Below are positions 15,612-32,169 of a DNA stretch of 64,000 bases, one piece after another. The stretch is taken from the IMG/VR virus record IMGVR_UViG_3300023235_000008, positions 124,001-188,000 of that record; one strand, given 5' to 3'. The notes beneath the pieces are model-generated. The model was given only the letters and a program-made list of their open reading frames with translations, ran no database searches and was not told where the DNA came from. A program made the position numbers and the translations under genes. Position 1 is the stretch's first letter; each line of letters opens with the position of its first letter.

Positions 15612-15802
15612 CAGAACTGTTGTTCTTTAGTTAGCACATCTTCCATTTTTACTTTATTGTCATTCAAGTACCAATATTTGTCGCCATCTGCATATTCAAT
15701 CGCAGGACCATCTTCGCGATGTCGTTCGCCATTCATGTACCAATGTTTGTCGCCATCTGCATCGGTATGCATCCCATCTGTTCTCATGATTTCAAATCTC
15801 AT
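15593..15802 (-). CDS. HREDGPA-repeat microprotein with a C-terminal FW tag
   Basis: NGERHREDGPAIEY; ends LTKEQQFWWKLKS. Confidence 0.75.
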   Translation of the reverse strand: MRFEIMRTDGMHTDADGDKHWYMNGERHREDGPAIEYADGDKYWYLNDNKVKMEDVLTKEQQFWWKLKS

Positions 15803-16024: not shown

Positions 16025-17360
16025 TCCAAAAATCCAAGGCGGCATCGTTATGTTTACCGAATATTTCAATCATAGTGATGGGTTGCATGCGAATACTTTC
16101 AAGATACTCAATACGCTTCTTACCTTTTCTACGACCTTCTTCAAAATCGTCTGGATACTTATTTTCCATAGTATCACGAGCAAGGAGATTTGTCAACACG
16201 TCAATGAGTGGTTTTTGATTACGGTCGGCTAATGGGGTCAACTCGTCTATCAACTCGTGGAGTATAGGATGCAGAACATCTTTTGGCAACCATAATGGAC
16301 ACATTGCCACACTGCTATCAAACTCAAAACAGACTTTAGACAAGATTTGGGTGTTATATTTTTTGGATAGGTGAAACATATTACGAACCTCGAATAAGCC
16401 GGGTGTTGTTAATGTGAAATCCAGTCTCATTTGGTTTGGTTTTTGTTGTGAAGTCAATCCTTCTTCAAAGTGTTTAATGAACTTTTGGTAGTCAAGTCCT
16501 GTTCGTATATATTCACCAATGACTCCTGTACCATCAATGCTCGCACACACTTGCCAATCCCTAAATGATTTCAACACGGTGAACAATGAAGCGTTTTTCG
16601 ATATACCGTGTCCTGACTTATTATAAATCTCACTTAGATTAGTGTTATAACGGGCATACACCTTTGACGAATGACCTGTGCGGACAAGAATCTCCATTGT
16701 TTCCCAATGCTCTTTGAACATAAGCGGTTCGCCACCAACCCAGTATATTTCTTCTAATGATTTATTAACTATGGCGTCACGTAACTCACCATACATATCA
16801 GATTGATTGTTTGCTAACTCTTTTTTATATTTCATCCAAGGGTGAAACTGGCCAGCATACTCGTCATTTTTTTTAACTTCTGATTCCCAAGATGAACTAA
16901 GCATCGGTCCACACATACGACATTTGAAGTTGCATAAGTTGCTGAACCGATAGTCAAAGCTTACAGGCTGGCCGTTGTAGTGCCCGTCTGGGTCCGTGTT
17001 TGCAATAACCTCATCCCACTTATCACCAAACAGGTGCTCAAAGTAATCGCGGTATACACTTGTGTTTAGAAGCTTACCAGTGCACACTTCACACTCAGGC
17101 AGAACTTCGTTGTTCATCATACGAAGCCTCACGCTTTTCATATGATCACTATTCCAATGTTCTTTGAGACTAGGTATAGAGAAAGTTTGCTGCTTTTCAA
17201 AAAAAGCCATTACTTCTTCTTTGGATTTGTTCTCCATGCTATCGTTAGTATCTATGTATTGTTTAAAGTTAGTAGATGGTTCGCGACTAGCACAACAGAG
17301 TCTGCGTTCACCTTGCGGTGAACAATAGCTGTGTACCCACGGGGCAATGCATTTGGTCAT
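16011..17360 (-). CDS. Radical SAM enzyme with N-terminal twitch/SPASM-like Cys domain
   Basis: CIAPW…CC…CEVC; CNFKCRMC; GGEPL; SIDG; EYIR. Confidence 0.9.
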   Translation of the reverse strand: MTKCIAPWVHSYCSPQGERRLCCASREPSTNFKQYIDTNDSMENKSKEEVMAFFEKQQTFSIPSLKEHWNSDHMKSVRLRMMNNEVLPECEVCTGKLLNTSVYRDYFEHLFGDKWDEVIANTDPDGHYNGQPVSFDYRFSNLCNFKCRMCGPMLSSSWESEVKKNDEYAGQFHPWMKYKKELANNQSDMYGELRDAIVNKSLEEIYWVGGEPLMFKEHWETMEILVRTGHSSKVYARYNTNLSEIYNKSGHGISKNASLFTVLKSFRDWQVCASIDGTGVIGEYIRTGLDYQKFIKHFEEGLTSQQKPNQMRLDFTLTTPGLFEVRNMFHLSKKYNTQILSKVCFEFDSSVAMCPLWLPKDVLHPILHELIDELTPLADRNQKPLIDVLTNLLARDTMENKYPDDFEEGRRKGKKRIEYLESIRMQPITMIEIFGKHNDAALDFWNDIK

Positions 17361-17716
17361 AGATTTGCGACAATCCTTTTCAATTCTGCAATTTTAGGCT
17401 TATTCTTCTCTATCATGAAGTCGTGAAACCCATTATGAAACCACTTATAATTATTATAACATACATCGGTTACATTTTCCATACAAAGTTTTTGTATGCT
17501 ATCCAATATACCAATAAATCTTAAATCATCTTCGGTTTCTGATCGCAACTTACTTTCAAGGTCGCGGATTGGTACTATAAAATCGCCATCATAATCTGAT
17601 AACAGAATGCTTTCCCATCCCATCGCATACAGCATATTGCGGGTGGCGGTCGATGCAGATTTAGCTATCGGGACAACGCCAAGGTCTTTTTTCGGAGACA
17701 CTATTACTTCAATCAT
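17357..17716 (-). CDS. Sulfotransferase-family-like short protein (possibly truncated)
   Basis: PIAKSAST (5'-PSB-like) and IRDLESKLRS (3'-PB-like). Confidence 0.45.
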   Translation of the reverse strand: MIEVIVSPKKDLGVVPIAKSASTATRNMLYAMGWESILLSDYDGDFIVPIRDLESKLRSETEDDLRFIGILDSIQKLCMENVTDVCYNNYKWFHNGFHDFMIEKNKPKIAELKRIVANL

Positions 17717-17925
17717 ATCGGTTTTCTACTTGTGATTTTTTTCGCTATCAAAATGACCTCGTAATCTTCTGCTTCTTTTCTTCTTTTGAAATCTGCTGGG
17801 TCTTCACACAAACTATCAAAGAAATCTTTTTTATCACGGCATTCTATTTCTTCGGGGGTTATTTCTACCGCCGCTTCATCAATGCGTGTTAATAAATCTT
17901 TAAAAAAATCGCTATCGTCAGTCAT
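17713..17925 (-). CDS. Microprotein with two FF variants of the tag
   Basis: DSDFFKDLL and DKKDFFDSLCEDP. Confidence 0.55.
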   Translation of the reverse strand: MTDDSDFFKDLLTRIDEAAVEITPEEIECRDKKDFFDSLCEDPADFKRRKEAEDYEVILIAKKITSRKPI

Positions 17926-18121
17926 TATATTTCCATTCCCATTTACTTCCAAGTTGTTGAAGTTGAAGTTTACACATAGTTCTTGCGTATTTGTTATCCG
18001 TTATCGGAAAGTCACAGTGCGACAAGTCATATGGATTGCCGTCCTCGGGCAAATACTTGCAACTTTCGCAAGACTTTACGCCATCCCATTCCAAGGCTTT
18101 CCAAAACTTATCTTTATTCAT
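17918..18121 (-). CDS. FW-tag microprotein, CxxC/WxW class
   Basis: MNKDKFWKAL…CESC…C…C…WEWKYND. Confidence 0.8.
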   Translation of the reverse strand: MNKDKFWKALEWDGVKSCESCKYLPEDGNPYDLSHCDFPITDNKYARTMCKLQLQQLGSKWEWKYND

Positions 18122-19298
18122 ATCCCATCGCTTTTGCTATGTGTGGATAAATGTCCGCAAAATCTTGCTTGCGTAATCTATCAGTTGCCTTCATATAGTT
18201 ACAAAATACTTTACCATCGCTGCCCGAACCTGCCTCAATGAAGTTAATAAGTTGTTGCCAGTTTTCATTGTATTGTGGCATGATATGCATACAATGATAC
18301 TTAATGTTATCAACCACTAGCCGTTTGCATTCCGGTGTCATATACTGGACATTCATATGCCATGGGTCGTGCAAATAGTTCCAATGGATTGAATCAAACT
18401 TACCCTCTTCTTCTGCCCACATCAATAACTGGTCAAGATAGAATACGTTTTGTATATTTATAGTGAAACAAAGTTGTCTGGTAAAAGTTGTGCTGTTAAT
18501 CCATGCTTTTTTAATAATAAATGAACGCACTTCATCCCATTTGGCACCATACCGTTCGTATTCAAATCGCTCACCAATATTATCAACAGAATATGCAAAC
18601 TCTACACTCTTAAAATCATATAGAAAATCATAATGGTGGACTTGTGTGCCATTAGTATTATAGTGCAACTCAATCGTATTTTTTACTTCGGTAGGAATAT
18701 TTGACAAGAAATCAATATGTTCTTTAATCATAAATGGTTCACCGCCAGTGAACTCAATGTACTTGATTTGTTCTACCTCAGTCATATTAATAAGGTTATC
18801 CCAAAAATGATGATTATCTTCTGGCCAGCGTCCTAGCTGAAGTTGCTTATATGCTAGATGTTCTTTGCCGCCGCCGTCACGTTCCATTTCTTCTTTAGCC
18901 CATTTCGAACTTGACCAAGAACCACAAATACGACATTTTAGATTACATTTGTTTCCAAGTTTCAAATCAAGAAACCACAAGCTATCGGGTTCAATGTCAG
19001 TGTAATCAATCTTATCCATAAGATGTTTTAGGCGAAATTGGGTATTCATACGCTTAGACATTTTGCCAGCAGATTCTTCTTCCCAACATCTCGAACACGT
19101 TTCGGGTTTCTCGCCATTCAAAAACTGTTGGCGTAGGTCTTTCATATAATCAGATTTATATGCGTCTTCGATAGTGTGTTTACGTAGGTCAATCCCCGGC
19201 ACTTCGTCACGAGCAAGACAGCACGGACGGCATCCGCCCATCGGCGTTGTTTCCATACTAATCCACGGTAACGGGCAAATATTTGGTAGTTTATTCAT
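18114..19298 (-). CDS. Radical SAM enzyme with N-terminal twitch/SPASM-like domain
   Basis: CPLPW…PCC…CSRC; CNLKCRIC; GGEPF. Confidence 0.9.
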   Translation of the reverse strand: MNKLPNICPLPWISMETTPMGGCRPCCLARDEVPGIDLRKHTIEDAYKSDYMKDLRQQFLNGEKPETCSRCWEEESAGKMSKRMNTQFRLKHLMDKIDYTDIEPDSLWFLDLKLGNKCNLKCRICGSWSSSKWAKEEMERDGGGKEHLAYKQLQLGRWPEDNHHFWDNLINMTEVEQIKYIEFTGGEPFMIKEHIDFLSNIPTEVKNTIELHYNTNGTQVHHYDFLYDFKSVEFAYSVDNIGERFEYERYGAKWDEVRSFIIKKAWINSTTFTRQLCFTINIQNVFYLDQLLMWAEEEGKFDSIHWNYLHDPWHMNVQYMTPECKRLVVDNIKYHCMHIMPQYNENWQQLINFIEAGSGSDGKVFCNYMKATDRLRKQDFADIYPHIAKAMGYE

Positions 19299-19531
19299 TT
19301 ATTAAGGTATCCCAAAACGCTGCCTTCTTTGATTTCTTCTTGCGGTCTATGTATATTTTTTTCATAAAAAATCTTCCTGCATTCACAACACGCTATTTCT
19401 TGTTCAATAATCATATATGGTTCTGAATCTTTGATTTTGACTTCTTTGGTTTCTCGGTTTACAACGAAACCGGCACCGCACCCACATCGCAACGGATTAC
19501 TTAAAGCATTCCAAAACTCGTCTTTATTTAT
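19295..19531 (-). CDS. FW-tag zinc-ribbon microprotein with ATA at the expected start
   Basis: ATA-NKDEFWNALSNPLRCGCG…CCEC. Confidence 0.65.
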   Translation of the reverse strand: MNKDEFWNALSNPLRCGCGAGFVVNRETKEVKIKDSEPYMIIEQEIACCECRKIFYEKNIHRPQEEIKEGSVLGYLNK

Positions 19532-20838
19532 TTCCAGTCTTTTAATCTCATTAACTCAGGAAACACATCATAAAAGTGTTCATTTCTTAGTGTATCTAGT
19601 TTACCAATCGTTTCGTTAAACTTGGGGATTAAATATGTATTATCTGTCCCATTCATAAAGTTCAATGCCGATTTAAAACCATTTGTCGCACGATGAAAAT
19701 CATCGCTCGGCTCAATGAATGCGATATGTTCATTGTATATTTCTTCGACTTCCTTCTTCATATCCTGTGGCAAAATATCCATACGGTATTCGTCTGGACC
19801 TTGTAGTATATTGACGTTCCAATCCTTGCCACGTACCAATCCAAGTTTAATCCACTCTCGATGAAAATCAGGAATATGATATGCGTTCATAACACTCATT
19901 GTCGAACTAACATAAAAATCCACATCAGGACAAACCCGCATCATTTCCTCACGATTAAGAACAACCTGTTTCCATTTTGTACCATACCGCATAAGCTCGC
20001 CTCGTTCATACGAAGCATCAAGACTTGCTCCAATACTCACACTGTCAAACTCTTTCCACATTTCAAGAACGTTTTCGCTCTTGTATTTCAACTCAGTAAA
20101 GTTAGTATTATATGATAGTTTAACATCATTTCGCCCTTGGCGCAATAGTTCTTTTAACACCTTATAATGTTCTTCCATCATTAGGGGTTCGCCACCAGCA
20201 AAATATACCTCCTGAATATACGGAATATGTGGCAATAGTTGTTCCCACGCATCGGTTTGATATCGACCAGCGTAAGTAACATTTTCCGCATCCTTTGGCA
20301 ACCAGTTATATTTCTTCTTTTCTTTAACCCATTTCGAACTAAAGATATCACCACACGAACGACATGCTAAGTTACATAGATTTGAAAATCGTATGTCATA
20401 ATAGCGTAGTTTAAAATCACCCGTCGTCCCATCGTTATTAATATCAACGTCTTTAATATTATGACCGAATGACTGATTGGCTGTATTGCGCATACTAAAG
20501 AAACCATTGCGTTCTTGTTCGTAGCATTTAGTGCATTCGTCGCATGATTTTTCATTTACCATATTGCTCCGAATGGTATTCATTTTATCATTATGGAAAA
20601 TCTCTTCCATTGTATTATCTCGCATTGAACCAACAGGGTTTTCGTATGTTGCTAGACAACAAGGATAAGCCTTACCATCTGGATATGCGTGTAGGTGTAC
20701 CCATGGCAACATACAAAACGTCTTACTATCCATAAGTAGCTCACGCTCGGTATCGGTTAACTCTTCTATTTTTATGTTAATAGGGGCACGATTACCATAA
20801 TCGTATTTTGTGTAATAATCGTCCTCGTCTTTACTCAT
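19528..20838 (-). CDS. Radical SAM enzyme with N-terminal twitch/SPASM-like domain
   Basis: FCMLPW…PCC…CTKC; CNLACRSC; GGEPL. Confidence 0.9.
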   Translation of the reverse strand: MSKDEDDYYTKYDYGNRAPINIKIEELTDTERELLMDSKTFCMLPWVHLHAYPDGKAYPCCLATYENPVGSMRDNTMEEIFHNDKMNTIRSNMVNEKSCDECTKCYEQERNGFFSMRNTANQSFGHNIKDVDINNDGTTGDFKLRYYDIRFSNLCNLACRSCGDIFSSKWVKEKKKYNWLPKDAENVTYAGRYQTDAWEQLLPHIPYIQEVYFAGGEPLMMEEHYKVLKELLRQGRNDVKLSYNTNFTELKYKSENVLEMWKEFDSVSIGASLDASYERGELMRYGTKWKQVVLNREEMMRVCPDVDFYVSSTMSVMNAYHIPDFHREWIKLGLVRGKDWNVNILQGPDEYRMDILPQDMKKEVEEIYNEHIAFIEPSDDFHRATNGFKSALNFMNGTDNTYLIPKFNETIGKLDTLRNEHFYDVFPELMRLKDWK

Positions 20839-21113
20839 CTAAACTTTCCATTTATTCTAAACTTATAATCATTATACCATTTACTCCCACACCGCTCACA
20901 TGTTGGCTGAAGGGTGCCCATGTCAGGTTGTTTTTGATGCCACGTCCAATCATTCGGGTATTTTGGTTGTGCTTTGTATACAGTATACGGAAAAGTAAAT
21001 ATCGGATGACCGTTTTCGCACTCAGCCGTTTCACCACCATACGCATATACCTTACTATGGTCTATTGACAATGCTTCAATAAAAGATTCTTTGCTTATAG
21101 CGTTTTGTACCAC
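20835..21113 (-). CDS. Tag-variant zinc-ribbon microprotein (start GTG 21113 or ATA 21098)
   Basis: SKESFIEAL…CENGH…CERCG. Confidence 0.65.
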   Translation of the reverse strand: MVQNAISKESFIEALSIDHSKVYAYGGETAECENGHPIFTFPYTVYKAQPKYPNDWTWHQKQPDMGTLQPTCERCGSKWYNDYKFRINGKFR

Positions 21114-22432
21114 GTGACAAGTTCCTCTGGAAATGTTTCTTCAAATAGTTTACCGCGGCGAATGTCATACTGTGTATAAAACTGTTTGAAATCGTGCTGC
21201 CTTGCTTCTACATCAATGGGGGCTGGTTCTCGTAGATAATCAATCAATCGTTCAATGTGATCTATTTCATGTGCGTGTAATAGTTTTGGGTCTTGTTTCA
21301 TTAACCATCCACCAAGGGCTGCACGGCGGGTTGAACGGATTTCTTCGGGAAGAACCAAGCAAGATTGAAAGCTCGGGAATCTAAGTATATTTAGTGTAAA
21401 ACTAGGTTGTTTACCCACAATCCAATGCTTTTGTCTTAACATAATAAGATGGTCAAGCATATCAGTTAGTGTCCACAAACACAATGCATTAACCGTGCAC
21501 ATAACACTGACATCATTGAATGTGCCATCGGCAAGAAGCGCATCCAAGCGTGATGTCCACTGATCGTAATCCAATCCATCACGAATATATTCGGCGTGTG
21601 CGTCTGTCGCTTCGCAACTAGTATACAATGTGCCGAAGTTAATAACATAATCATTGATAAGTCTATTAAATAATACGTCCGAACATCCAAGGTTTGAGTT
21701 CATTGAAATAGGTGGATACTTGAAAACGCTATCAGCACTATTTTTATAATCAGCATAAATCATATCAAGCAGTTTCCAAAAGTCCTGCGACATGGTTGGT
21801 TCACCGCCCGTAATACGCAACTCCTGCAACGATCCCTTTAAGTCGCTTTCCCACCACTTAAAGAACGCATCGACATATTGATTTGGTTCACCTACCTTGA
21901 AAGGTTGTGAAGCAGCATGTGTATGCGTAAAGTGATTGCGTCCGTCAGTTACTAAGCCTTCGTATGGACCGTTTTCTTTGATATCTTTTGCCCACGTTGT
22001 AGAAAACGCAGGGTTACAATACGAACAAGCAAAGTTACAAGTACGATCAAATGATATCTCTAGCGTCTTTAAGTCAACGTCTTGTTGTGGATTTGTTTTG
22101 TATGCAGTAAGGTTTTCCGACCAATCATAAATCTTTGATTTGTATACACGGTCAGGAACAGCATCAGTTTCCATATCCATCACTTTCCAACAGTAGTCGC
22201 AACCTTTAGGACGTTCACCACGCACCATTAACTCACGGTCGTGTTTCTTTTCCTTGGTGTTATGTAATAGCTTTGGATTGTTTACAACATCGTCAGATAT
22301 TTGATGTGCAGGGGGATGGTGACACGATGTAGTTTGACCGCTGCCTAACCATATAGTAGCGTTATACCATTTCGCCGAACAAAAGCTTGGCGATAGTTTA
22401 TCCAATACTTTTTTGTAATCTTTATCGTTCAC
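21095..22432 (-). CDS. Radical SAM enzyme with N-terminal twitch/SPASM-like domain
   Basis: FCSAKW…SCHHP…CDYCW; CNFACSYC; GGEPT. Confidence 0.9.
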   Translation of the reverse strand: MNDKDYKKVLDKLSPSFCSAKWYNATIWLGSGQTTSCHHPPAHQISDDVVNNPKLLHNTKEKKHDRELMVRGERPKGCDYCWKVMDMETDAVPDRVYKSKIYDWSENLTAYKTNPQQDVDLKTLEISFDRTCNFACSYCNPAFSTTWAKDIKENGPYEGLVTDGRNHFTHTHAASQPFKVGEPNQYVDAFFKWWESDLKGSLQELRITGGEPTMSQDFWKLLDMIYADYKNSADSVFKYPPISMNSNLGCSDVLFNRLINDYVINFGTLYTSCEATDAHAEYIRDGLDYDQWTSRLDALLADGTFNDVSVMCTVNALCLWTLTDMLDHLIMLRQKHWIVGKQPSFTLNILRFPSFQSCLVLPEEIRSTRRAALGGWLMKQDPKLLHAHEIDHIERLIDYLREPAPIDVEARQHDFKQFYTQYDIRRGKLFEETFPEELVTWYKTL

Positions 22433-22679
22433 TGAACATTATTCCAATCCGTTTCTGTTCTTTTTTGTATTGTAGAACGCTATGAAAATGGCTTTTCCAC
22501 GATTCTTGTTTTTCAGGATCGCTTACAATCTCGTCACAATCCTTACAAACTTCACATAACTTATAAATCATATACAGCTTTTTTTGTTTGCCTACCGTAA
22601 CTGTTGTGTTGGCGGCTTTGATGAGGATTGTAGGATGAATGCATTTAGTCAAACCATTCCAAAACTGTTCCTTATCCAT
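22422..22679 (-). CDS. FW-tag Cys-containing microprotein
   Basis: MDKEQFWNGLTKCIH…CEVCKDC. Confidence 0.75.
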   Translation of the reverse strand: MDKEQFWNGLTKCIHPTILIKAANTTVTVGKQKKLYMIYKLCEVCKDCDEIVSDPEKQESWKSHFHSVLQYKKEQKRIGIMFSER

Positions 22680-22788
22680 AAGGTTCCCATTCTTCACCAG
22701 TGAAAATCAACAATCCTTTTTCTTCGTCGTGGATTATTTCACCTTCAAATGGCACTACTGGCGGTGGCGAGGGCGTATCATCTGTCAT
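22672..22788 (-). CDS. 38-aa microprotein consisting of one tail-fibre-type motif (not in ORF track)
   Basis: MTDDTPSPPPVVPFEGEIIHDEEKGLLIFTGEEWEPYG; overlaps both neighbours. Confidence 0.65.
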   Translation of the reverse strand: MTDDTPSPPPVVPFEGEIIHDEEKGLLIFTGEEWEPYG

Positions 22789-24142
22789 ATTTGTTGCTCC
22801 TATACATACAATCATCCCAGAACTCAATCATCTCTGGAAACGTTTCTAAGAAGTTAGTGCCCCTACGGTTATCGTGTTCATTGAAGAATCGATAGAAGTT
22901 AACACGTGCTTCATTTAAATCTTTCTCGCCCATAGGAGTTTTCATATGGTCAAGGTTTCTCACCATCTTGGCAGCTTCGTAATCCTTGAATCCATCATAA
23001 CAAGTAGGACAAGACTCTGGACTATTACCTAAGTATTTTACCATATTTTCAAGCTGAAATCTATATGATTCGGGCAATATTTGAATCGATTGCCATACTG
23101 GATCAGTAAGAACTGGGATGTCAAACCACACACGCTGATAATCGTTGCTGTAAATCTTACGAAGACCAAGGATAGCGGTAAACAACTCAGGGAGACTAGT
23201 GATACTAAGGTTATTTAGGGTAATAATAAATGTAACACTATTCCTATGTGGAATGTCGTGTAAGAATGTATTGACGTTATCCCATAAACGATTGAAGTCA
23301 AGCCCGTGTCGAATATACTCAGCCTTTGAACCAAATGCATCCAATGAAACAAACTGCATAAAATGTTCTACATTCTCGCCGTCGCAAATACGTTTCGTAT
23401 AATCCATATACTTGTCAAAGATTTTAGGCTCTACACTAAAGTTGCTCGTTACGTTTAAGTGAAGGTCTGGTTTTGGATTTTCTAAAACATAGTCAAATAC
23501 TTTATAGGTGTTCGGGTCCATTAATGGTTCACCTCCTGTCATTCTGAAATGACGCAATGTTGGATACATTGCTGCCCAATCTTCCCAAAACTTTTCTACA
23601 TATGGATTATGTTCACGTTGTGGGATTGGGCGACGGTCACCAGCAAAATGCGCAGGATGGTTGTGCGGGGTAATGGTTGGCCACGCACCTTGTGATTTTG
23701 TTTCTGCCATCCATGATGAACTATATTGTGGCGAACAATAGCTACACTTTAAGTTACAGGCGTTATTAAAGTTCACCTCAACATACGATGGATTGACAAC
23801 GCCGCCCGCAACAACCTTATCAAAGTTATCCATTGCCCAAGGCTCACCACTACGATAGTGACGGTCTGACAGATTTCCTTGGTCTTCCATCTTCCAGCAA
23901 TAATCACAACCAGTAGGTCGCTTACCCGCAACCATCATTTGCTTTTGGATATCTTTTTCGGATGTTTCGTTTAACGTTTCACGTTTCAAATCCATCTTGT
24001 GCGGTGGCGGATGATAACATGAGTTAGTATGACCTGTTGTTAGGTGAAGGCTGGTTTGTAACCATTTAGCCAAGCAGAATGTTTCGGAAACATCGTCCAG
24101 TTTCTTCTTGGCGTGTAATGCATCGTCGTTATAGTTACTCAC
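22778..24142 (-). CDS. Radical SAM enzyme with N-terminal twitch/SPASM-like domain
   Basis: FCLAKW…SCYHP…CDYCW; CNLKCSYC; GGEPL. Confidence 0.9.
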   Translation of the reverse strand: MSNYNDDALHAKKKLDDVSETFCLAKWLQTSLHLTTGHTNSCYHPPPHKMDLKRETLNETSEKDIQKQMMVAGKRPTGCDYCWKMEDQGNLSDRHYRSGEPWAMDNFDKVVAGGVVNPSYVEVNFNNACNLKCSYCSPQYSSSWMAETKSQGAWPTITPHNHPAHFAGDRRPIPQREHNPYVEKFWEDWAAMYPTLRHFRMTGGEPLMDPNTYKVFDYVLENPKPDLHLNVTSNFSVEPKIFDKYMDYTKRICDGENVEHFMQFVSLDAFGSKAEYIRHGLDFNRLWDNVNTFLHDIPHRNSVTFIITLNNLSITSLPELFTAILGLRKIYSNDYQRVWFDIPVLTDPVWQSIQILPESYRFQLENMVKYLGNSPESCPTCYDGFKDYEAAKMVRNLDHMKTPMGEKDLNEARVNFYRFFNEHDNRRGTNFLETFPEMIEFWDDCMYRSNKYDR

Positions 24143-25053
24143 CAGTTCTCCCGCTTTCTGATTATATCAATCTCGGTTGTCATAAAGTCTTCCTGTACGT
24201 GATTCTTTTTATAGAAGTGTTTAAAAAACTTTGATTGGTCACTATCATATCGCACCAATGGGATATTCAATCGTGACTTAACAATATCAATGGTTGCTTT
24301 GATATATCTATCATCGTTATTATTCGCATAACCATCGTATTGCATTTTCAATACGTCGAAGTCTTGAACGCCCGTATAATCCCAATCGGTTAGCATAACG
24401 GCGTGTAATCCGAATAAAGCACCATCCATTGCTGAAACACCAAACTCGGCGTCGGCTCCTGTATTCAACCATACCATAAGATTATCAAGGTTCTTATCGT
24501 GAACCATTTGCTCAAACTCTGGTAGTGTAGGACGAACACCTTTATTCAGACACATCTTTACGCCTTCACGAAACCCTGCTCTCCAAGCATTGAACTCACT
24601 TTGATTGGGATGCGTAGTTCCGTAAACATTCCACATAGCGTGATAGTTAGGGTCATAGCAAAACTCTACGTTGTTTTCATCTGACCCATCACTATTTTCG
24701 TGCGTTCGCATATTCATAATGAAATCACGATGCCAAATACTAATACCGCCGTTGCCGTATCTCAATCCATTTATTGCATTGATTGCCTTCCAACGATATG
24801 CACTTGGTACATCAGGTGCTTCAAATGTTTGATTAAAGAAGTTTGGATCAGGCATATGGTCACCATCAATCAACACAAACCATTCGGTTTCACTGATTTC
24901 AGCTGCCGCTTTGTGTGCGGAATCACTGCCTTTTACACCATCGACACGATTTGCCCATGGCACCATATTCTGGATTTCTACCCAAAACTCTTCTTTTTTT
25001 GGTTCGTCAAATGTTAGATAGACCACATCAAGGTCTGCAACATCAATCTTCAT
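24139..25053 (-). CDS. GT-A fold glycosyltransferase-like protein
   Basis: GVKGSDSAHKAAA, DxD motif IDGD, NGLRYGNGG, AWRAGFREGVKM. Confidence 0.7.
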   Translation of the reverse strand: MKIDVADLDVVYLTFDEPKKEEFWVEIQNMVPWANRVDGVKGSDSAHKAAAEISETEWFVLIDGDHMPDPNFFNQTFEAPDVPSAYRWKAINAINGLRYGNGGISIWHRDFIMNMRTHENSDGSDENNVEFCYDPNYHAMWNVYGTTHPNQSEFNAWRAGFREGVKMCLNKGVRPTLPEFEQMVHDKNLDNLMVWLNTGADAEFGVSAMDGALFGLHAVMLTDWDYTGVQDFDVLKMQYDGYANNNDDRYIKATIDIVKSRLNIPLVRYDSDQSKFFKHFYKKNHVQEDFMTTEIDIIRKRENW

Positions 25054-25222
25054 ATTCTACCCAAAAGTCTTTTTCAAAATCAAACGTATATTGAATGTCG
25101 GTAGTAGTATCTCGGTATACGTGAATACCAATGCCGATATTCTTGTCTGCCTGTAAATAACTCTTATTAGGCTGCGGTGGCATTTGTAATACTTGCCAAA
25201 ACTTATCTCTGCTTATGTTCAA
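25043..25222 (-). CDS. FW-tag microprotein (PPQP class)
   Basis: SRDKFWQVLQMPPQP…FEKDFWVE; TTG start assumed. Confidence 0.7.
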   Translation of the reverse strand: MNISRDKFWQVLQMPPQPNKSYLQADKNIGIGIHVYRDTTTDIQYTFDFEKDFWVEYED

Positions 25223-25400
25223 TCCATTTATCCTTTTCATAATTAAAAACCCATTTTAAACCCGTCTGTATATCTACCCAAATAGTAACCATAGGAAGTT
25301 CTTTATTATATATACCGAGCTGATATACCGTCAACATACTTTCTTCGCTCGGCTGTGGGGGTTCGCCTAACCCTTCCCAAAAATCTTCTTTACTTAACAC
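25203..25400 (-). CDS. FW-tag microprotein (PPQP class)
   Basis: GTG-LSKEDFWEGLGEPPQP…YEKDKWIE. Confidence 0.7.
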   Translation of the reverse strand: MLSKEDFWEGLGEPPQPSEESMLTVYQLGIYNKELPMVTIWVDIQTGLKWVFNYEKDKWIEHKQR

Positions 25401-25539
25401 AAATCCATTCTTTTCCATTCCAAATCTCCAATCCACCTGTGTCGTTGTTATAAAATACGGAACCCACTGGGCGGGTCGGCGGTGGTGCCTTCAATGCTTC
25501 CCAAAAATCTTCTTTATTCAAAGTCTTTTCGGTATTCAT
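25390..25539 (-). CDS. FW-tag microprotein carrying a tail-fibre-type motif
   Basis: LNKEDFWEALKAPPPTRPVGSVFYNNDTGGLEIWNGKEW. Confidence 0.75.
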   Translation of the reverse strand: MNTEKTLNKEDFWEALKAPPPTRPVGSVFYNNDTGGLEIWNGKEWICVK

Positions 25540-25861
25540 AGAAGTCTTCGGTGCCGATGAAGTATGGGTTATTTTTTCTAGTGCCATACATTCCAGTCTC
25601 CGATTTGACAAGGTTGTATGTTTGTGGCTTAGATGGCGTTTTAATCTCGCCATCAATGATTTTATTATCACTTCTTATACTTTCCCATACGCTGCGCTCA
25701 ACGATAATGAAATCACCTTCGGGTGGTTCAACATTGTATTCAATAGCGACTTGTTTAAGGATATCGCCAGTTTCCTTGTTATAGTATAACCTATATTCAG
25801 GCGTAAAGTCAATAACTGGTTCAGCATCAAATAGAACTAATCCTTCTAAAAAGTTACTCAA
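25514..25861 (-). CDS. Hypothetical protein (EYRLYYNKETG motif)
   Basis: ORF in operon; TTG start at 25861 assumed from overlap. Confidence 0.65.
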   Translation of the reverse strand: MSNFLEGLVLFDAEPVIDFTPEYRLYYNKETGDILKQVAIEYNVEPPEGDFIIVERSVWESIRSDNKIIDGEIKTPSKPQTYNLVKSETGMYGTRKNNPYFIGTEDFYEYRKDFE

Positions 25862-25997
25862 AATCTTCCTCTCTATATTCTTCTCCAAATATCTCTTTTA
25901 ATCCCGGCATTAACTGTCGCAATACAGCAGCACGGCGAATAGCCTCTTTACTTTTCACTGGATTTTTTAAAGTTTTCCAAAACTCATGTTTATTCAT
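25854..25997 (-). CDS. FW-tag microprotein carrying a capsid-N-terminus-like peptide (47 aa, not in ORF track)
   Basis: MNKHEFWKTLKNPVKSKEAIRRAAVLRQLMPGLKEIFGEEYREEDFE. Confidence 0.75.
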   Translation of the reverse strand: MNKHEFWKTLKNPVKSKEAIRRAAVLRQLMPGLKEIFGEEYREEDFE

Positions 25998-26185
25998 TTC
26001 TTGTTCCATTCCCAGTGCTTACGATCTCCCGTTGCACTCACTAATATACTCACACAATCCACGTGTCCCGGCGCTGTTGCGTGTTTACAACTAAAACACG
26101 TTTTATCGTTTCCTAATAGAAACCAAAACTAGTTATCGTTTCCTAATAGAAACCAAAACTCTTCTTTACTACAATCGTTGTTCGT
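25994..26185 (-). pseudogene. Inactivated FW-tag CxxC/WxW microgene
   Basis: ACG-NNDCSKEEFWFLLGNDN*FWFLLGNDKTCFSCKH…C…WEWNKK; ACG at the start position and a TAG created by a duplication. Confidence 0.75.
26103..26160. repeat. 28-bp exact tandem duplication (period 30)
   Basis: ttatcgtttcctaatagaaaccaaaact at 26103-26130 and 26133-26160. Confidence 0.95.
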
Positions 26186-27020
26186 ATCGTCTGATGAGTT
26201 CGTCACTGCAAAAATCCTTCTGTTGATAATGGAATGGAAACATTTGATAGTATCCTCCCACAATAAAATCCATATCTTCCGTCAACGCCCAACTCACCAT
26301 ATCCGTCCACTGATTGGAATGAAAGCCCTGTAGTTCTGGCTTCATATGAACAAAGGTCGGTTGAACACCCGGCATATAACAACGTTCTTCACCAATCATC
26401 AATGCAGCTAACGCATATACTTCATCGGTTGTTGGGCGTTCAATACGGCAGTTCTTTAAAATATTATCCCGATACATTGACCAGTTCTCAAATATTTCTT
26501 TAGCCGCCATAAAAAAGTCAGCCATTGTCTTTGAATATCTGAAATAACTAAAACCATTATATGTATTTAGAAGGCTGTTATCATCGAATACTTTTCGGAA
26601 TCGGCGGTCAGTAATAAGGTTGCCACGATAATCAACTACGTCCGTAGTTATACAAATATCCTTGGCTCTCATATGATCCCACCAATGTGAAACATCACGT
26701 GTGAAAATCATATCAACATCAAGGTTAACTGTCTCTTTAAATGGCGTAGCGTGGTACAGTTTCCAAGCATTAGCCAACTTCCATTCATCGCCAGCAGCGG
26801 CGTCACCGAAAGGTATATCAACAATGTAATCAAATACTTTGCGATGTTTATCGGTGATTTGCGCTTTAGTCTTTTCATCAACGGCGATAGCATACTTGTT
26901 AATGCGTTGTGTTGCCTTGATAGAAAGGGCTTGTAAATATGCTATACGCAAGTAATCAACATCGCTGTTCTGAACAAAAGCAAAATATCCTTGCTGGTCT
27001 TTGAACTGTTCTTTATTCAT
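26169..27020 (-). CDS. GT8-like glycosyltransferase
   Basis: TPFKETVNLDVDMIF (DxD), TTDEVYALA, FVHMK, FHYQQK. Confidence 0.75.
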   Translation of the reverse strand: MNKEQFKDQQGYFAFVQNSDVDYLRIAYLQALSIKATQRINKYAIAVDEKTKAQITDKHRKVFDYIVDIPFGDAAAGDEWKLANAWKLYHATPFKETVNLDVDMIFTRDVSHWWDHMRAKDICITTDVVDYRGNLITDRRFRKVFDDNSLLNTYNGFSYFRYSKTMADFFMAAKEIFENWSMYRDNILKNCRIERPTTDEVYALAALMIGEERCYMPGVQPTFVHMKPELQGFHSNQWTDMVSWALTEDMDFIVGGYYQMFPFHYQQKDFCSDELIRRYEQRL

Positions 27021-27216
27021 TGTTCCATTCCCATTTATCATTGCCGCCAGCTTGACGTTGATCTACCATACCGCATCTAGTGCATCTATCGCACACGTCA
27101 AGATCATTGTAGTCCGCATCCCTCCCGATAATATGCAAAGTATCTTCCCATTTACAGTTGCCGCATACTCTTTCAGCAGGTTCACATAAAGTTTTCCAAA
27201 ACTCCTGTTTATTCAT
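27013..27216 (-). CDS. FW-tag microprotein, CxxC/WxW class
   Basis: MNKQEFWKTLCEP…CGNC…CDRCTRC…WEWNNE. Confidence 0.8.
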   Translation of the reverse strand: MNKQEFWKTLCEPAERVCGNCKWEDTLHIIGRDADYNDLDVCDRCTRCGMVDQRQAGGNDKWEWNNE

Positions 27217-27424
27217 TTTCACCATCCCAATGCCAATGGTCAGCTGCTCGTCTGATTTCCCGCGGGGGTATACCCGATATAGCACGAACGCAAGTATACT
27301 TAACGTGTAGACTACATTCCATGCCAAGGCTAGGTCCAGCGTCCATCATATGCGAACAGTTATTACACGTATGTGTCGATGGTTCACGCAGTGTGTCCCA
27401 AAACTTTTCTTTATCTTTATTCAT
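27209..27424 (-). CDS. FW-tag microprotein, CxxC/WxW class
   Basis: MNKDKEKFWDTLREP…CNNC…C…C…WHWDGENE. Confidence 0.8.
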   Translation of the reverse strand: MNKDKEKFWDTLREPSTHTCNNCSHMMDAGPSLGMECSLHVKYTCVRAISGIPPREIRRAADHWHWDGENE

Positions 27425-27632
27425 ATTTTCCATTCCATTCATATATACTATAATGACGGACGTATGTGTAATCGCCGTTTTCTTTTTCTCGTTTTAACGC
27501 CATCATAGCATCATTAAAGTTACAGGAAAAACAAGGTGACGGTGCATTTTTTGATTTTCCTTCATGAATACAAGTGTTACAACTCGGCTTTGGGCTTTTT
27601 AATGTTTCCCAAAACTTTTCTTTATCGTTCAT
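27417..27632 (-). CDS. FW-tag microprotein, CxxC/WxW class
   Basis: MNDKEKFWETLKSP…CNTC…CFSC…YEWNGKYE. Confidence 0.8.
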   Translation of the reverse strand: MNDKEKFWETLKSPKPSCNTCIHEGKSKNAPSPCFSCNFNDAMMALKREKENGDYTYVRHYSIYEWNGKYE

Positions 27633-27819
27633 CGACACCATTCCATTCCCAATAATCTTCAGTAATAAAGAAACCTTCAGTAAAGAAACGAAACCTACGA
27701 TGCTTAATACAATCTGCGTCCAGTGAACACCCTTGGTCTACCAAATGAATACAGTTTCGGCAGTTATGGTGTGTTGGTTCACGCAATGCTTTCCAAAACT
27801 TTTCTTTATCTTTATTCAT
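27622..27819 (-). CDS. FW-tag microprotein, CxxC/WxW class
   Basis: MNKDKEKFWKALREP…CRNC…C…C…WEWNGVDER. Confidence 0.8.
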   Translation of the reverse strand: MNKDKEKFWKALREPTHHNCRNCIHLVDQGCSLDADCIKHRRFRFFTEGFFITEDYWEWNGVDER

Positions 27820-27825
27820 ATAAGA

Positions 27826-28086
27826 TTATGGAAAGACAGGCAGGGGTTCATCGTCGTCGGTGTCGTCTTTGCCATTCCATTTCCAATAACTGTATTCGCC
27901 GTGCTGTTCACTCACGTGTGCGCTTTTACAACGACCACAAAATGCACTACCATTCACATTACCAAAATCGTGATACGAATATCTTTCGGGAGAATAGAAA
28001 CCGGGACGTGTACAAGTACCACATGATTTTGCAGGTGTTTTTAAATCTTGCCAGAACTTTTCTTTATCATCGAGGTTTTTATACAT
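27826..28086 (-). CDS. FW-tag microprotein, CxxC/WxW class
   Basis: DDKEKFWQDLKTP…CGTC…CGRC…WKWNGK. Confidence 0.8.
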   Translation of the reverse strand: MYKNLDDKEKFWQDLKTPAKSCGTCTRPGFYSPERYSYHDFGNVNGSAFCGRCKSAHVSEQHGEYSYWKWNGKDDTDDDEPLPVFP

Positions 28087-28970: not shown

Positions 28971-29191
28971 TGTTTATGCTCAATCATAGATTTATGATAT
29001 TTGTGAGACATATTGAAAAAGAATAAATCCTTTTCACTCTTGAACTTTAAATAATACATTCCGCCCCAATGACCTTCAATATCAAATGACCATTTAAAAC
29101 GATCAAACGTTTGAAGGTTCACAAGCGTTATGTGCCACTCGTCTATATCGTTAAGGGCTGAAAAGAACTCAAGTTTATGCCATTTGCTCAT
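28967..29191 (-). CDS. Microprotein with C-terminal FKSEKDLFFF module
   Basis: ATGA-coupled at both ends. Confidence 0.65.
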   Translation of the reverse strand: MSKWHKLEFFSALNDIDEWHITLVNLQTFDRFKWSFDIEGHWGGMYYLKFKSEKDLFFFNMSHKYHKSMIEHKQ

Positions 29192-29490
29192 TTAGGAAAG
29201 TTCCTTAAAATGTTCGCCATATCTTTAATCGTGTCGTGTTTTTCTTTTGCCTCTACTTCTTCGGGACGAATGATACGATAGGTTTCAAGCTGAATACGAT
29301 AATATTCTAAGACTTCACTGTTTGAATATCGCCCCGAATAGTCGTAACCATCGGGGTCCAGCTTTTCAAGTTCGGCAATATGCTTTAGAATATTTTCTTT
29401 TGCTCGTTCTTCAATCAACGAATAAGGCGGTGGCAATGGACACTGTAATGCATTCCAGAACTCTTCTTTAGATAAATCATCTTCAATCAT
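29188..29490 (-). CDS. FW-tag microprotein, helical payload
   Basis: LSKEEFWNALQCP. Confidence 0.7.
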   Translation of the reverse strand: MIEDDLSKEEFWNALQCPLPPPYSLIEERAKENILKHIAELEKLDPDGYDYSGRYSNSEVLEYYRIQLETYRIIRPEEVEAKEKHDTIKDMANILRNFPK

Positions 29491-29822
29491 AGTTGGTCAG
29501 TCTTTCGAATCTTACGTAGTTGTTCGTATTCGTTATGCCAATCGTTCATTACTTCATTGTATTTTGTGATTAAACCATGAAGAAAATGGTGGACATCATC
29601 TATTTTGATTGGGTTGTTGTACGAATCTTTTAGAAAATATTCATCTGGGTAGGTTCCAGTATATTCATCAAACCGCATTAATGTCTCAGCGAATGATATC
29701 AACTCAGGGGTGACTTTGAATAAGCCGCCATTATACGCAAGCGTAAGAGCTTGTTCTGCTCTTTCCGCTGCGGTTTGTTTTAATACTTTATGATCTAGAT
29801 GTTTCTTAGCAATACTTTCCAT
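29487..29822 (-). CDS. Hypothetical protein, first gene after a consensus promoter
   Basis: YNGGLFKVTPELISF, DSYNNPIKI. Confidence 0.75.
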   Translation of the reverse strand: MESIAKKHLDHKVLKQTAAERAEQALTLAYNGGLFKVTPELISFAETLMRFDEYTGTYPDEYFLKDSYNNPIKIDDVHHFLHGLITKYNEVMNDWHNEYEQLRKIRKTDQL

Positions 29823-29827
29823 AGGTG

Positions 29828-29856
29828 ATTATATCACGTATTGGAATATATGTCAA
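29828..29856 (-). promoter_or_regulatory. Perfect sigma70 promoter
   Basis: TTGACA-N17-TATAAT with extended TG; ATG only 5 nt downstream. Confidence 0.85.
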
Positions 29857-30837: not shown

Positions 30838-32169
30838 TTAGTTTACAGTAACGAAGGCTTCAATATTTCCATCAGCGCCATCTTCTAGTGCACGTCCAAC
30901 CACATTGAATGCAGTTGCTTCACCCGCCTGTGCGGCACGTGCAACGCCATTACCAGCAGAAACCAAACGGTCACCTTTACGAACTTGTCCAACTACACAT
31001 ACTGGGCAACGTCCTGTTAACGCTACGGCTGTTCCGCCTTCTAATCCAGCGTTCATAAGGTGGGCTGGGTTTGTTGAAACAACACCAAATACCGTATCTG
31101 AAAGTTCTTCATTCGCTAATGTAATCTCGTCAATGCCGCCGAGAGCAACCAATGTTCCCGGAGCATATACTGAATCAGCGGCGAAGTTTTCCGCAACGTC
31201 GGCGTATTGTGCCTGTGTTGATGTTCCGTTAAATGTCGTCGCATAAATCGTAGCGAATACATTACCAGAAGCACCAATGTTATGTGTATTTGTTGTTCCC
31301 GGCAAGATTGCCGAGGTAGCACCGTCAATAAGTGCAACAGTAGTGTTAACACCGCCGTCATTAATATTGAACTTGAGGTCACCATCTAGTGTCGTGTTAC
31401 GAACTGTTACATCCGATCCAGCAACACCAATCGTTAAATCACTGTCTGCGCCGATAGTAATACCGCTATCATTTAGAACACCAAATGTGCCCGATGTGGT
31501 ATCAGCTTCGTCAGAACGTAAAAACTGCGTTGAGTTGATTGTGTCTAATGTGTCTGCGTTTGATACGGTTCCGATGAACTGTGCACCAGCAACTGTCGTG
31601 CTTAGATTGTAACCCGGCTTAACCGTAGCAAATCCTGAGATAGCAACCTGTGGAGTGAATTCGCTATCTTTAGAAATGATTGCTACAATAGCATCAGATA
31701 CAAACATCTTAACAACAACGTGGTCCGATGCAAGGGAGTCGGTAATAGTATCAATGACTGGTCCAGACTGACCCGTGCCTGTTGTAAACGCTGGTCCAAT
31801 AAGTGTGAATGACGTGCCGTTATAAACTTTCAACTGGCTGTTCGTCGTATCCCACCAAAGGTCACCAGTAACAACTGGCGTTGGCTCAGTTGCAGATGAT
31901 GTTGAACTTGAAATCGTTTTCCAAGCCGTTCCGGTGTAAACTTGCATCAAACTTGATGTAGTATTCCAGAATAACTGACCCGCAATAGGTGCACTTGGTG
32001 CTGATGTATTCGCAAAGTTTTCAAGAAGCTTAACGAAATCTTCGTTTAGAATCTCCCCATAACCTGCGTAGTTCTTACCGATAAGTGTAATATCAGTCGT
32101 TGTATCAATAGTACCGTCTGCGACTGTAGTTAGCACGGCACCTGTTGTTTTATTTATTGTGTAGGCGAT
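30838..32169 (-). CDS. Tail fibre/baseplate-associated protein with apparent ATC start
   Basis: GGAGA SD 6 nt before ATC-AYTINKTTG; LIGKNYAGYGE, LLENFA, GQLFWN/GDLWWD repeats, AQYADVAE, VALTGRCPV. Confidence 0.8.
   Translation of the reverse strand: MAYTINKTTGAVLTTVADGTIDTTTDITLIGKNYAGYGEILNEDFVKLLENFANTSAPSAPIAGQLFWNTTSSLMQVYTGTAWKTISSSTSSATEPTPVVTGDLWWDTTNSQLKVYNGTSFTLIGPAFTTGTGQSGPVIDTITDSLASDHVVVKMFVSDAIVAIISKDSEFTPQVAISGFATVKPGYNLSTTVAGAQFIGTVSNADTLDTINSTQFLRSDEADTTSGTFGVLNDSGITIGADSDLTIGVAGSDVTVRNTTLDGDLKFNINDGGVNTTVALIDGATSAILPGTTNTHNIGASGNVFATIYATTFNGTSTQAQYADVAENFAADSVYAPGTLVALGGIDEITLANEELSDTVFGVVSTNPAHLMNAGLEGGTAVALTGRCPVCVVGQVRKGDRLVSAGNGVARAAQAGEATAFNVVGRALEDGADGNIEAFVTVN

What the first reader, a model, noticed from the sequence alone, without database searches (positions are those of the whole stretch)
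22672..25539. Isolated tail-fibre motifs expressed as microproteins
Seen: PVGSVFYNNDTGGLEIWNGKEW (25390..25539, FW-tagged) and PFEGEIIHDEEKGLLIFTGEEW (22672..22788, untagged) match the motif repeated in this phage's own fibre-like protein 30838..32169 (PIAGQLFWNTTSSLMQVYTGTAW, VVTGDLWWDTTNSQLKVYNGTSF). The two PPQP cassettes at 25043-25400 look like more distant versions. Inference: single-module mimics of a virion domain, acting as decoys for host sensors of structural proteins, as assembly modulators, or as acceptor mimics for the neighbouring glycosyltransferases.
Basis: partly seen in the sequence, partly recalled or inferred. Interest (0 to 1): 0.7.

Follow-up and report, generated by a model that had tools for sequence, protein, structure and literature searches.

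The report
Stand-alone tail-fibre repeat units as microproteins
Two tiny genes of an uncultured salt-lake jumbo phage each encode one unit of a small beta-sheet repeat that normally builds the base of phage tail fibres. One unit is certain and one probable, their job is untested, and a decoy or mimic role remains a guess.

Summary
Both ORFs exist on the minus strand.

**hp49 (25390-25539, 49 aa):** this is a genuine single unit of a widespread tail-fibre repeat of about 30 residues, consensus PxxPxxG-dlwYnT-turn-LyvWnGtaW. An exhaustive HMMER search found 87 proteins, all 161-3752 aa, each with 2-15 tandem copies of the unit. A profile built only from foreign fibres ranks hp49 second of 4946 genome ORFs, after the phage's own fibre. 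AlphaFold2 gives the same three-strand meander in hp49 and in both fibre units.

**hp38 (22672-22788, 38 aa):** a probable, very acidic, divergent unit (single-test P about 0.001-0.005).

**PPQP cassettes:** they share only the tag and proline stretch with hp49. Likeness to the fibre unit is not significant.

**Origin:** hp49 is not a copy of this phage's own fibre units. It resembles foreign units more.

**Context:** the "FW tag" marks a family of about 43 small proteins specific to this phage. These are inserted, together with the two units, into a conserved backbone of glycosyltransferase-like and radical-SAM genes behind a perfect sigma-70-type promoter. Three syntenic relatives lack both tags and free units.

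**Function:** most likely a minimal oligomerisation or fibre-docking module. This is inferred. The decoy or mimic idea is untested.

The parts
25390..25539 (-). hp49: a 49-aa microprotein gene (43 aa if translation starts at TTG 25521). It consists of an FW-tag helix, a PPP linker and one fibre-repeat unit.
   Evidence: ORF and sequence. Homology. AF2 gives helix 9-17 and strands 28-31, 36-40 and 45-48. It is not called in public gene sets because a 77-aa call from GTG 25436 overlaps it.
25489..25518 (-). FW tag of hp49 (residues 8-17, NKEDFWEALK).
   Evidence: A tag profile built without hp49 scores it 21.6 bits, inside the 43-member family. Predicted helix.
25396..25485 (-). Fibre-repeat unit of hp49 (residues 19-48).
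   Evidence: Aligned over 27 of 29 profile positions at 30-32 bits. Matches 10 of 12 key positions, equalled only by the fibre.
22672..22788 (-). hp38: a 38-aa untagged, very acidic microprotein (10 D/E against 1 K/R). It is a probable divergent single unit, residues 10-37 = 22678-22761.
   Evidence: AGGAG 8 nt before the ATG, with start and stop overlapping the neighbouring genes. Called as a gene on 7 contigs. Statistics. Charge.
25203..25418 (-). PPQP cassette 1, an FW-tagged protein of about 71 aa. Its relation to the unit is unproven.
25043..25240 (-). PPQP cassette 2, an FW-tagged 65-aa protein. Its relation to the unit is unproven.
30838..32169 (-). Tail fibre gene. Two repeat units lie at 31912-31998 and 31798-31884, and a Peptidase_G2 / intramolecular-chaperone region lies at the C-terminus.
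   Evidence: Pfam PF11962, E=5.8e-6. 6115 homologues of the N-terminal region. AF2 strands 55-58/63-67/72-74 and 93-96/101-105/110-112. An ATC stands where homologues have the start ATG.
29828..29856 (-). Perfect sigma-70-type promoter (TTGACA, 17 nt, TG-extended TATAAT) at the head of the accessory block that holds both microproteins.
   Evidence: It is one of only two near-consensus sites on the minus strand of this block.
25305..25334 (-). Second near-consensus sigma-70-type promoter (11 of 12), between hp49 and hp38.
16083..24142 (-). Five tandem N_Twi radical-SAM paralogues interleaved with hp38 and FW-tagged small ORFs.
   Evidence: NF033640 at 261-392 bits against a cut-off of 170. FW ORFs.
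24139..25053 (-). Glycosyltransferase-like gene (DxD-type motif, no family match), immediately downstream of the PPQP cassettes.
   Evidence: ORF. No Pfam or NCBIfam hit. A homologue is present in relatives.

Best explanation
hp49 certainly, and hp38 probably, encodes one isolated unit of the roughly 30-residue three-strand beta-meander repeat that forms the particle-proximal N-terminal part of many phage tail fibres. This repeat overlaps Pfam DUF7360, PTL_trimer, Mtd_N and the end of DUF2793. The phage's own fibre has two such units.

The two units are not recent copies of that fibre. Together with about 43 'FW-tagged' small genes, they were inserted as cassettes into a conserved backbone of glycosyltransferase-like and radical-SAM genes that follows the fibre genes. 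That backbone is headed by a perfect sigma-70-type promoter, so they are probably made before the late fibre proteins.

hp49 is a chimera of the family's N-terminal FW helix, a proline linker and the unit.

How they work is inferred, not shown. A 30-residue sheet cannot bury its conserved aromatic face alone. In fibres, by analogy with Mtd_N and PTL_trimer (not shown for this repeat), that face would pack against the same unit of the two sister chains. A free unit should therefore either self-associate, as the T4 fibritin foldon does, or dock by the same surface onto fibre-type units or their docking site. That would make it a minimal oligomerisation or capping module. In hp49 the amphipathic FW helix may instead cover that face.
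For: Identity of hp49:
- searches support it by profile.
- PHROG hits fall on the same profile columns as the fibre.
- tblastn hits fall in annotated tail or tail-fibre proteins of Streptomyces, Campylobacter and Synechococcus phages.

Same predicted fold and strand spacing:
- hp49 and both fibre units agree.
- Shape searches return phage fibre proteins and PTL_trimer clusters, with TM by query 0.52-0.59 over residues 17-49. BFVD hits have probability 0.97-1.00, though E is only 0.02-0.16.

Role of the domain in fibres: DUF2793 is described as the conserved N-terminal domain that likely attaches fibres to the particle, and sometimes occurs with Peptidase_G2 (PMC5026251; bioRxiv 10.1101/150227). 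The fibre N-terminus weakly matches the end of DUF2793.

hp38:
- The structural positions are kept while the exposed positions are turned acidic.
- It has a strong ribosome-binding site.

Cassette insertion: three syntenic relatives have the backbone but neither tags nor free units.

Promoters.

Precedent: S-SM1 proteins of 76 and 82 aa and an ACG-2014b protein of 124 aa end right after one unit.
Against: - There is no evidence of expression. No RNA run was listed, and hp49 is not even called as a gene in public sets.
- There is no sequence variation or conservation outside this one phage population.
- The trimer prediction gave no answer, with pLDDT 44.
- No solved structure matches significantly.
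- hp49 matches its own fibre units worse than the median foreign unit, which does not favour co-assembly with that fibre.
- A sigma-70-type early context is odd for an assembly factor.
- hp38 is not significant genome-wide by profile alone.
Confidence: 0.5

Rival explanations
1. The FW tag is the working part. hp49 is simply one of about 43 early small proteins of a family specific to this phage, involved in host takeover, counter-defence or exclusion. In that family the C-terminal module is an interchangeable compact scaffold, and the fibre unit was borrowed only because it folds small.
For: - The tag profile separates 43 ORFs cleanly.
- The C-terminal modules vary: cysteine-rich, helical, PPQP or the unit.
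- Most members lie in regions rich in sigma-70-type promoters.
- The family is absent from Pfam, PHROGs and GenBank phages, and from syntenic relatives.
- A mosaic variant, P0211, shows shuffling.
Against: hp38 has the unit without the tag. The unit of hp49 keeps 10 of 12 family key positions, which suggests the unit's own surface is under constraint. No function of the tag is known.
Confidence: 0.22
2. The two ORFs are recombination debris in a hypervariable island: leftover fragments of fibre genes with no function.
For: - They are found only in this population.
- Relatives lack them.
- The same block holds a broken FW gene.
- A relative holds a 34-aa chimeric scar.
- hp49 has a weak ribosome-binding site.
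Against: - Both are intact units with their own start and stop, packed in overlap with neighbours like the surrounding genes.
- hp49 is an in-frame fusion of two independently conserved modules.
- hp38 keeps the structural positions while its surface has changed, and it has AGGAG at ideal spacing.
- Neither is similar enough to the phage's own fibre to be a recent fragment of it.
Confidence: 0.13
3. FW-tagged small proteins, hp49 among them, are substrates of the interleaved radical-SAM and glycosyltransferase-like enzymes, with the tag acting as a leader in the manner of ribosomally made modified peptides.
For: - Five radical-SAM paralogues alternate with small tagged ORFs.
- Tagged ORFs fill the gaps between three glycosyltransferase-like genes.
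- The pattern is a conserved N-terminal tag with variable cores, many of them cysteine- and tryptophan-rich.
Against: - The enzymes belong to N_Twi_rSAM, and peptide-maturase models score far below their cut-offs.
- Relatives keep the enzymes without any tagged ORFs.
- About 30 tagged genes lie far from the enzymes.
- The cores are long for such peptides.
- hp38 has no tag.
Confidence: 0.08
4. The free units soak up a host defence sensor that recognises fibre-type structural proteins.
For: The predicted early promoter context would place them in the cell before the late fibre appears. The acidic, altered surface of hp38 is compatible with a binding decoy.
Against: No sensor, host or defence system is known for this uncultured phage. 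The units are unlike its own fibre units. Nothing was or could be tested here.
Confidence: 0.05

Closest known systems
Tail-fibre N-terminal beta repeat (Pfam DUF7360 PF24059, PTL_trimer PF26696, Mtd_N PF18454, C-terminal part of DUF2793 PF10983)
   Same: The sequence signature, unit length and predicted three-strand meander are the same. The multi-unit proteins found with hp49 carry these Pfam families. Shape search returns PTL_trimer clusters.
   Different: hp49 and hp38 are single units with no fibre shaft or distal domain. They do not reach any curated Pfam model. hp49 carries a foreign N-terminal tag and hp38 is strongly acidic.
Small single-unit proteins in cyanophage fibre clusters (S-SM1 SSM1_045 and SSM1_046; ACG-2014b 'sericin-like' protein)
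   Same: They are short proteins that end a few residues after one unit. Their function is also unknown.
   Different: They are 76-124 aa and keep a fibre-like N-terminal segment of 40-90 residues. They sit among the fibre genes, not behind a sigma-70-type promoter, and they have no FW tag.
T4 fibritin foldon (27-residue trimerising beta-hairpin; from my own knowledge)
   Same: It works like a minimal, proline-preceded beta unit whose only known job is to bring three chains together.
   Different: No sequence match appears, even though foldon fusions abound in the PDB. The foldon is part of a long protein. Trimerisation of hp49 is unshown.
Hypervariable host-recognition cluster of marine T4-type myophages (PMC7029224)
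   Same: A giant structural protein is followed by fibres, glycosyltransferases and radical-SAM cassettes, and the island varies between relatives.
   Different: This phage's giant protein resembles those of the PA5oct, Rak2-like and Atu_ph07 jumbo phages. That description does not mention tagged microprotein cassettes.

Membership tests
Tail-fibre beta-meander repeat (DUF7360 / PTL_trimer / Mtd_N / DUF2793 end) | Sequence signature scored with profiles built from family members only | tested here: met
   For hp49: E=0.0021 and rank 2 of 4946; 30-32 bits against a 337-unit profile; hhalign P=3.8e-5; 87 multi-unit hits; 10 of 12 key positions.
Tail-fibre beta-meander repeat (DUF7360 / PTL_trimer / Mtd_N / DUF2793 end) | The same signature in hp38 | tested here: inconclusive
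   Single-test P=0.003-0.005. It matches 8 of 12 key positions, among the top 7 of 4946 ORFs. It is the reciprocal best hit of hp49. It is not in the genome-wide top list of the profile.
Tail-fibre beta-meander repeat (DUF7360 / PTL_trimer / Mtd_N / DUF2793 end) | The same signature in the two PPQP cassettes | tested here: not met
   hhalign P=0.17 and 0.025. HMM P=0.015-0.12. The short aligned pieces are in the expected register, but that is not evidence.
Tail-fibre beta-meander repeat (DUF7360 / PTL_trimer / Mtd_N / DUF2793 end) | Three-strand antiparallel meander with 4-residue turns | tested here: met
   This is a prediction only. hp49 strands are 28-31, 36-40 and 45-48 at pLDDT 80-86. The same layout appears in both fibre units at pLDDT 74-81.
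Tail-fibre beta-meander repeat (DUF7360 / PTL_trimer / Mtd_N / DUF2793 end) | Score above the gathering threshold of a curated Pfam model | tested here: not met
   No Pfam family for hp49 or hp38 even at E up to 10. The fibre itself reaches only E=0.1 for DUF2793.
Tail-fibre beta-meander repeat (DUF7360 / PTL_trimer / Mtd_N / DUF2793 end) | Part of a long, trimeric fibre protein, usually in tandem | tested here: not met
   These are stand-alone ORFs of 38 and 49 aa. All 87 significant relatives are 161-3752 aa with 2-15 units.
Tail-fibre beta-meander repeat (DUF7360 / PTL_trimer / Mtd_N / DUF2793 end) | Forms trimers | tested here: inconclusive
   The three-copy prediction gave 'no answer', with score 0.00 and pLDDT 44.
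FW-tag small-protein family of this genome | N-terminal M-[DN]-K-E-[EK]-F-W-x-[AT]-L-x-x-P | tested here: met
   hp49 scores 21.6 bits against a profile built without it, and 43 ORFs exceed 15 bits. hp38 has no tag.
Ribosomally made, enzyme-modified peptide precursors | Adjacent maturase of a known peptide-modifying family | tested here: not met
   Adjacency is present. However, the radical-SAM genes are N_Twi_rSAM, and peptide-maturase models score 15-23 bits against cut-offs of 380-650.
Ribosomally made, enzyme-modified peptide precursors | Post-translational modification of the core | not testable with these tools
   This needs mass spectrometry of co-expressed proteins.
T4 internal proteins with capsid-targeting sequence | N-terminal tag ending in a (L/I)-x-E cleavage site | tested here: not met
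   The residue two after the conserved L is E in only 7 of 40 tags, and a conserved P follows.

The most novel reading that the evidence does not exclude
The FW tag is a recognition leader, and this phage carries a library of about 43 tagged small proteins that its five radical-SAM paralogues and three glycosyltransferase-like enzymes modify. hp49 would then be a fibre-type unit fed into that pathway. That would make this a phage-borne, tag-directed protein-modification system with dozens of substrates.
Probability: 0.08. Interest if true: 0.85.

Novelty: new variant of a known kind. Interest (0 to 1): 0.5.

Why it matters
It shows that the smallest building block of a common tail-fibre stalk can exist as a free gene product of 38-49 residues, in one case fused to an unrelated family tag.

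If such units self-associate or cap fibre-type proteins, two things follow. They would be natural minimal trimerisation or blocking modules, useful for protein engineering. They would also be a possible route by which a phage tunes, or sabotages, fibre assembly.

The surrounding tagged family, interleaved with radical-SAM and glycosyltransferase-like genes, is the larger open question that this locus makes testable.

Tried and rejected
- **Close homologues of hp49.** None were found by word search, in IMG/VR or in GenBank phages. The exhaustive search cannot detect single-unit proteins, because one unit gives about 30 bits. Absence of microprotein hits therefore means little.
- **Solved structures.** Nothing significant appeared by sequence or by Foldseek. 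The same weak hits recur for both models: CBA120 tailspike 3, roseophage R4C baseplate chain 8gtc_T, and collagen XV/XVIII trimerisation domains. I do not count them.
- **Foldon homology.** Rejected on sequence.
- **FW tag as a copy of the fibre's own helix (EDFVKLL).** It looked tempting by eye, but the tag profile does not score it: rank 349 and at another place.
- **FW tag as a T4-type capsid-targeting sequence.** Rejected.
- **Trimer prediction.** No answer.
- **Expression.** No RNA run was listed.
- **Strain variation.** Contigs from other samples are either identical or match only the enzyme genes.
- **A wasted search.** The first paper search was lost to a term that matched 'mtDNA'.
- **A regex not used as a test.** My first regex was made after seeing the four sites, so I do not use it as a test.
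Full report
**What the window is.** The window is bases 124001-188000 of a single 230,059-bp virus contig. CheckV estimates the contig at 65% complete. It is held letter for letter by several salt-lake metagenomes. It has no near relative among GenBank phages. Its 4367-aa structural protein (32956-46059, minus strand) resembles those of the PA5oct, Rak2-like and Atu_ph07 jumbo myophages. Next on the minus strand come a 222-aa gene and then the fibre (30838-32169). The fibre has a Peptidase_G2 / intramolecular-chaperone region and a TATAAATA late-type motif upstream. A 317-aa fibre-like gene follows. After it comes a block of small ORFs, three glycosyltransferase-like genes and five radical-SAM genes. 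This layout recalls the hypervariable host-recognition cluster described for marine T4-type myophages, which also holds glycosyltransferases and radical-SAM cassettes (PMC7029224).

**The observation.**
- hp38 (22672-22788) has AGGAG 8 nt before its ATG. It overlaps the stop of the upstream radical-SAM gene and the start of the downstream gene.
- hp49 (25390-25539) has a weak ribosome-binding site and overlaps both neighbours. A TTG at 25521 would give the family-typical start MNKEDFW.
- Public gene calls miss hp49, because a 77-aa call from GTG 25436 runs over it.

**Is the likeness to the fibre real?** Pairwise BLASTP is weak. hp38 ORF against the fibre gives E=0.009. The 93-aa hp49 ORF against the fibre gives nothing. 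hp38 ORF against that ORF gives 1e-5. Profiles decide it.
- The fibre N-terminus has 6115 metagenomic homologues.
- From 38 units of those homologues and of two cyanophage proteins, and from none of the window's own sequences, I built a profile and searched all 4946 six-frame ORFs of the genome. The fibre came first, the hp49 ORF second (E=0.0021) and the next ORF had E=1.1.
- hhalign of the two microproteins against foreign units gives P=3.8e-5 over the whole unit.
- hp49 hits four PHROG families at the same profile columns as the fibre, and also families annotated as tail fibre, minor tail and virion structural protein.
- An exhaustive phmmer search of 1.84 billion representatives found 87 proteins at E up to 0.001, best 4.7e-23. 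All are 161-3752 aa, each with 2-15 stretches matching hp49 residues 18-48 or so.
- The foreign fibre profile recognises 337 units in 78 of those 87 proteins.
- Those proteins carry Pfam DUF7360, DUF2793, Mtd_N, DUF6087 and DUF2510.

The beta part of hp49 is therefore one unit of a widespread tandem repeat of tail-fibre-type proteins.

**Structure.** Without an alignment, AlphaFold2 gives hp49 a helix at 9-17 (the FW tag) and strands at 28-31, 36-40 and 45-48, with pLDDT 80-86 in the sheet. With 30 homologues, the fibre N-terminus gives the same strand-turn-strand-turn-strand layout twice, at pLDDT 74-81. Shape searches with the hp49 model return phage fibre, baseplate and collar proteins and clusters carrying PTL_trimer. 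Several of these are small proteins of 40-85 aa. No solved structure matches significantly.

**hp38 and the PPQP cassettes.** hp38 keeps the prolines, the glycines, the hydrophobic and aromatic positions and the final tryptophan. Its exposed positions are acidic: 10 D/E against 1 K/R.
- Its single-test P is 0.003-0.005.
- It matches 8 of 12 key positions chosen objectively from the 337 foreign units. It shares that score with four other ORFs of 4946. Only the fibre and hp49 score 10.
- It and hp49 are each other's best hit in the genome.

I rate hp38 as a probable unit. The PPQP cassettes match hp49 through the tag and prolines. They do not match the unit significantly.

**Not a copy of the phage's own fibre.** hp49 shares 7 identities with either of the phage's fibre units, below its median score against foreign units. 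It shares up to 15 of 26 with foreign units. The word 'mimic of this phage's own virion domain' is therefore not earned.

**The tag and the context.** The FW tag (M-[DN]-K-E-[EK]-F-W-x-[AT]-L-x-x-P) marks 43 ORFs in this genome.
- Most have a CxxC...CxxC core and end in W-E-W-[DN]-G.
- The family is absent from Pfam, PHROGs and GenBank phages.
- Outside this phage I found only a mosaic variant.
- Three syntenic relatives have the same backbone: fibre, fibre-like gene, a gene of about 110 aa, glycosyltransferase-like genes, a gene of about 114 aa and radical-SAM genes. None of the three has a tag or a free unit.

The tagged genes and the two units are therefore insertions specific to this lineage. 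The block starts with a perfect TG-extended sigma-70-type promoter at 29828-29856, just after the fibre-like gene. The genome has 50 such near-consensus sites, far above chance, and only two of them lie on the minus strand of this block. The microproteins are therefore predicted to be made from host-type promoters, unlike the fibre.

**Mechanism.** This part is inferred. Published work on DUF2793 proteins holds that the conserved N-terminus attaches the fibre to the particle. From my own knowledge, Mtd_N is a trimeric beta-prism. A free 30-residue unit that keeps the conserved aromatic face should self-associate or dock on fibre-type units. In hp49 the amphipathic tag helix may cover that face. 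The trimer prediction gave no answer. No RNA evidence could be had.

The rivals are as follows:
- The tag is the working part, and the unit is only a scaffold.
- The ORFs are recombination debris.
- The tagged proteins are substrates of the neighbouring enzymes.

**Comparison and verdict.** Short proteins that end in one unit already exist in cultured cyanophages: S-SM1 proteins of 76 and 82 aa and an ACG-2014b protein of 124 aa. hp49 and hp38 are shorter, lie outside the fibre cluster proper, and one carries a foreign tag. I file them as a new variant of a known kind. The tagged family interleaved with five radical-SAM paralogues is the more surprising feature of the locus.

Noticed in passing
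whole genome; in the window e.g. 14738-15049, 17918-18121, 27013-28086, 29188-29490 (-), 53849-54034 (+): A family of about 43 small ORFs shares the N-terminal FW tag. Most have a CxxC...CxxC core and end in W-E-W-[DN]-G. The family is absent from Pfam, PHROGs, GenBank phages and three syntenic relatives.
   Followed up: partly
window 16083-24142 (-): Five tandem paralogues of the N_Twi radical-SAM family (NF033640) alternate with small FW-tagged ORFs and hp38.
   Followed up: partly
window 32167-32169 (-): Where homologues have the start ATG, the fibre gene has ATC, with GGAG 7 nt upstream. This is a likely non-canonical start.
   Followed up: partly
window 25996-26281 (-): An FW-family gene is broken by an in-frame stop inside a tandem duplication of about 27 nt that encodes FWFLLGND. 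The rest of the gene, ending HWEWNKK, follows in the same frame.
   Followed up: partly
window 15593-15802 (-) and seven more places in the genome: MORN-type repeat proteins end in DPKEQFWWKLKS. This is an FW-like motif at the C-terminus instead of the N-terminus.
   Followed up: no
window 25400-25420, 27200-27230, 27620-27645 (-): The start ATG of the downstream gene sits inside the W-N-G or W-D-G codons (TGG AAT GG) of the upstream gene. The conserved C-terminal and N-terminal motifs of neighbouring cassettes therefore overlap in the DNA. 58-nt DNA repeats lie at 27370-27426 and 27765-27821.
   Followed up: partly
window 29820-29856 (-): The perfect sigma-70-type promoter ends 5 nt before the ATG of the 111-aa gene. 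That would give a leaderless or nearly leaderless message. The genome has 13 perfect and 50 near-consensus such promoters.
   Followed up: partly
L003:17920-18024: In the closest relative, a 34-aa ORF joins the N-terminal residues of a radical-SAM gene to the C-terminal residues of a glycosyltransferase-like gene. It looks like a recombination scar. A 44-aa HNH remnant follows the fibre in the same relative.
   Followed up: no
window 25514-25888 (-): The 124-aa gene upstream of hp49 begins with a degenerate tag (SNFLEGL). Its homologue in relative L003 begins MTNFWEGL.
   Followed up: no
L010:4600-5075 (Synechococcus phage S-SM1): Two adjacent genes of 76 and 82 aa in the tail-fibre cluster each end just after a single repeat unit. 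Longer paralogues with the same N-terminus follow them.
   Followed up: partly
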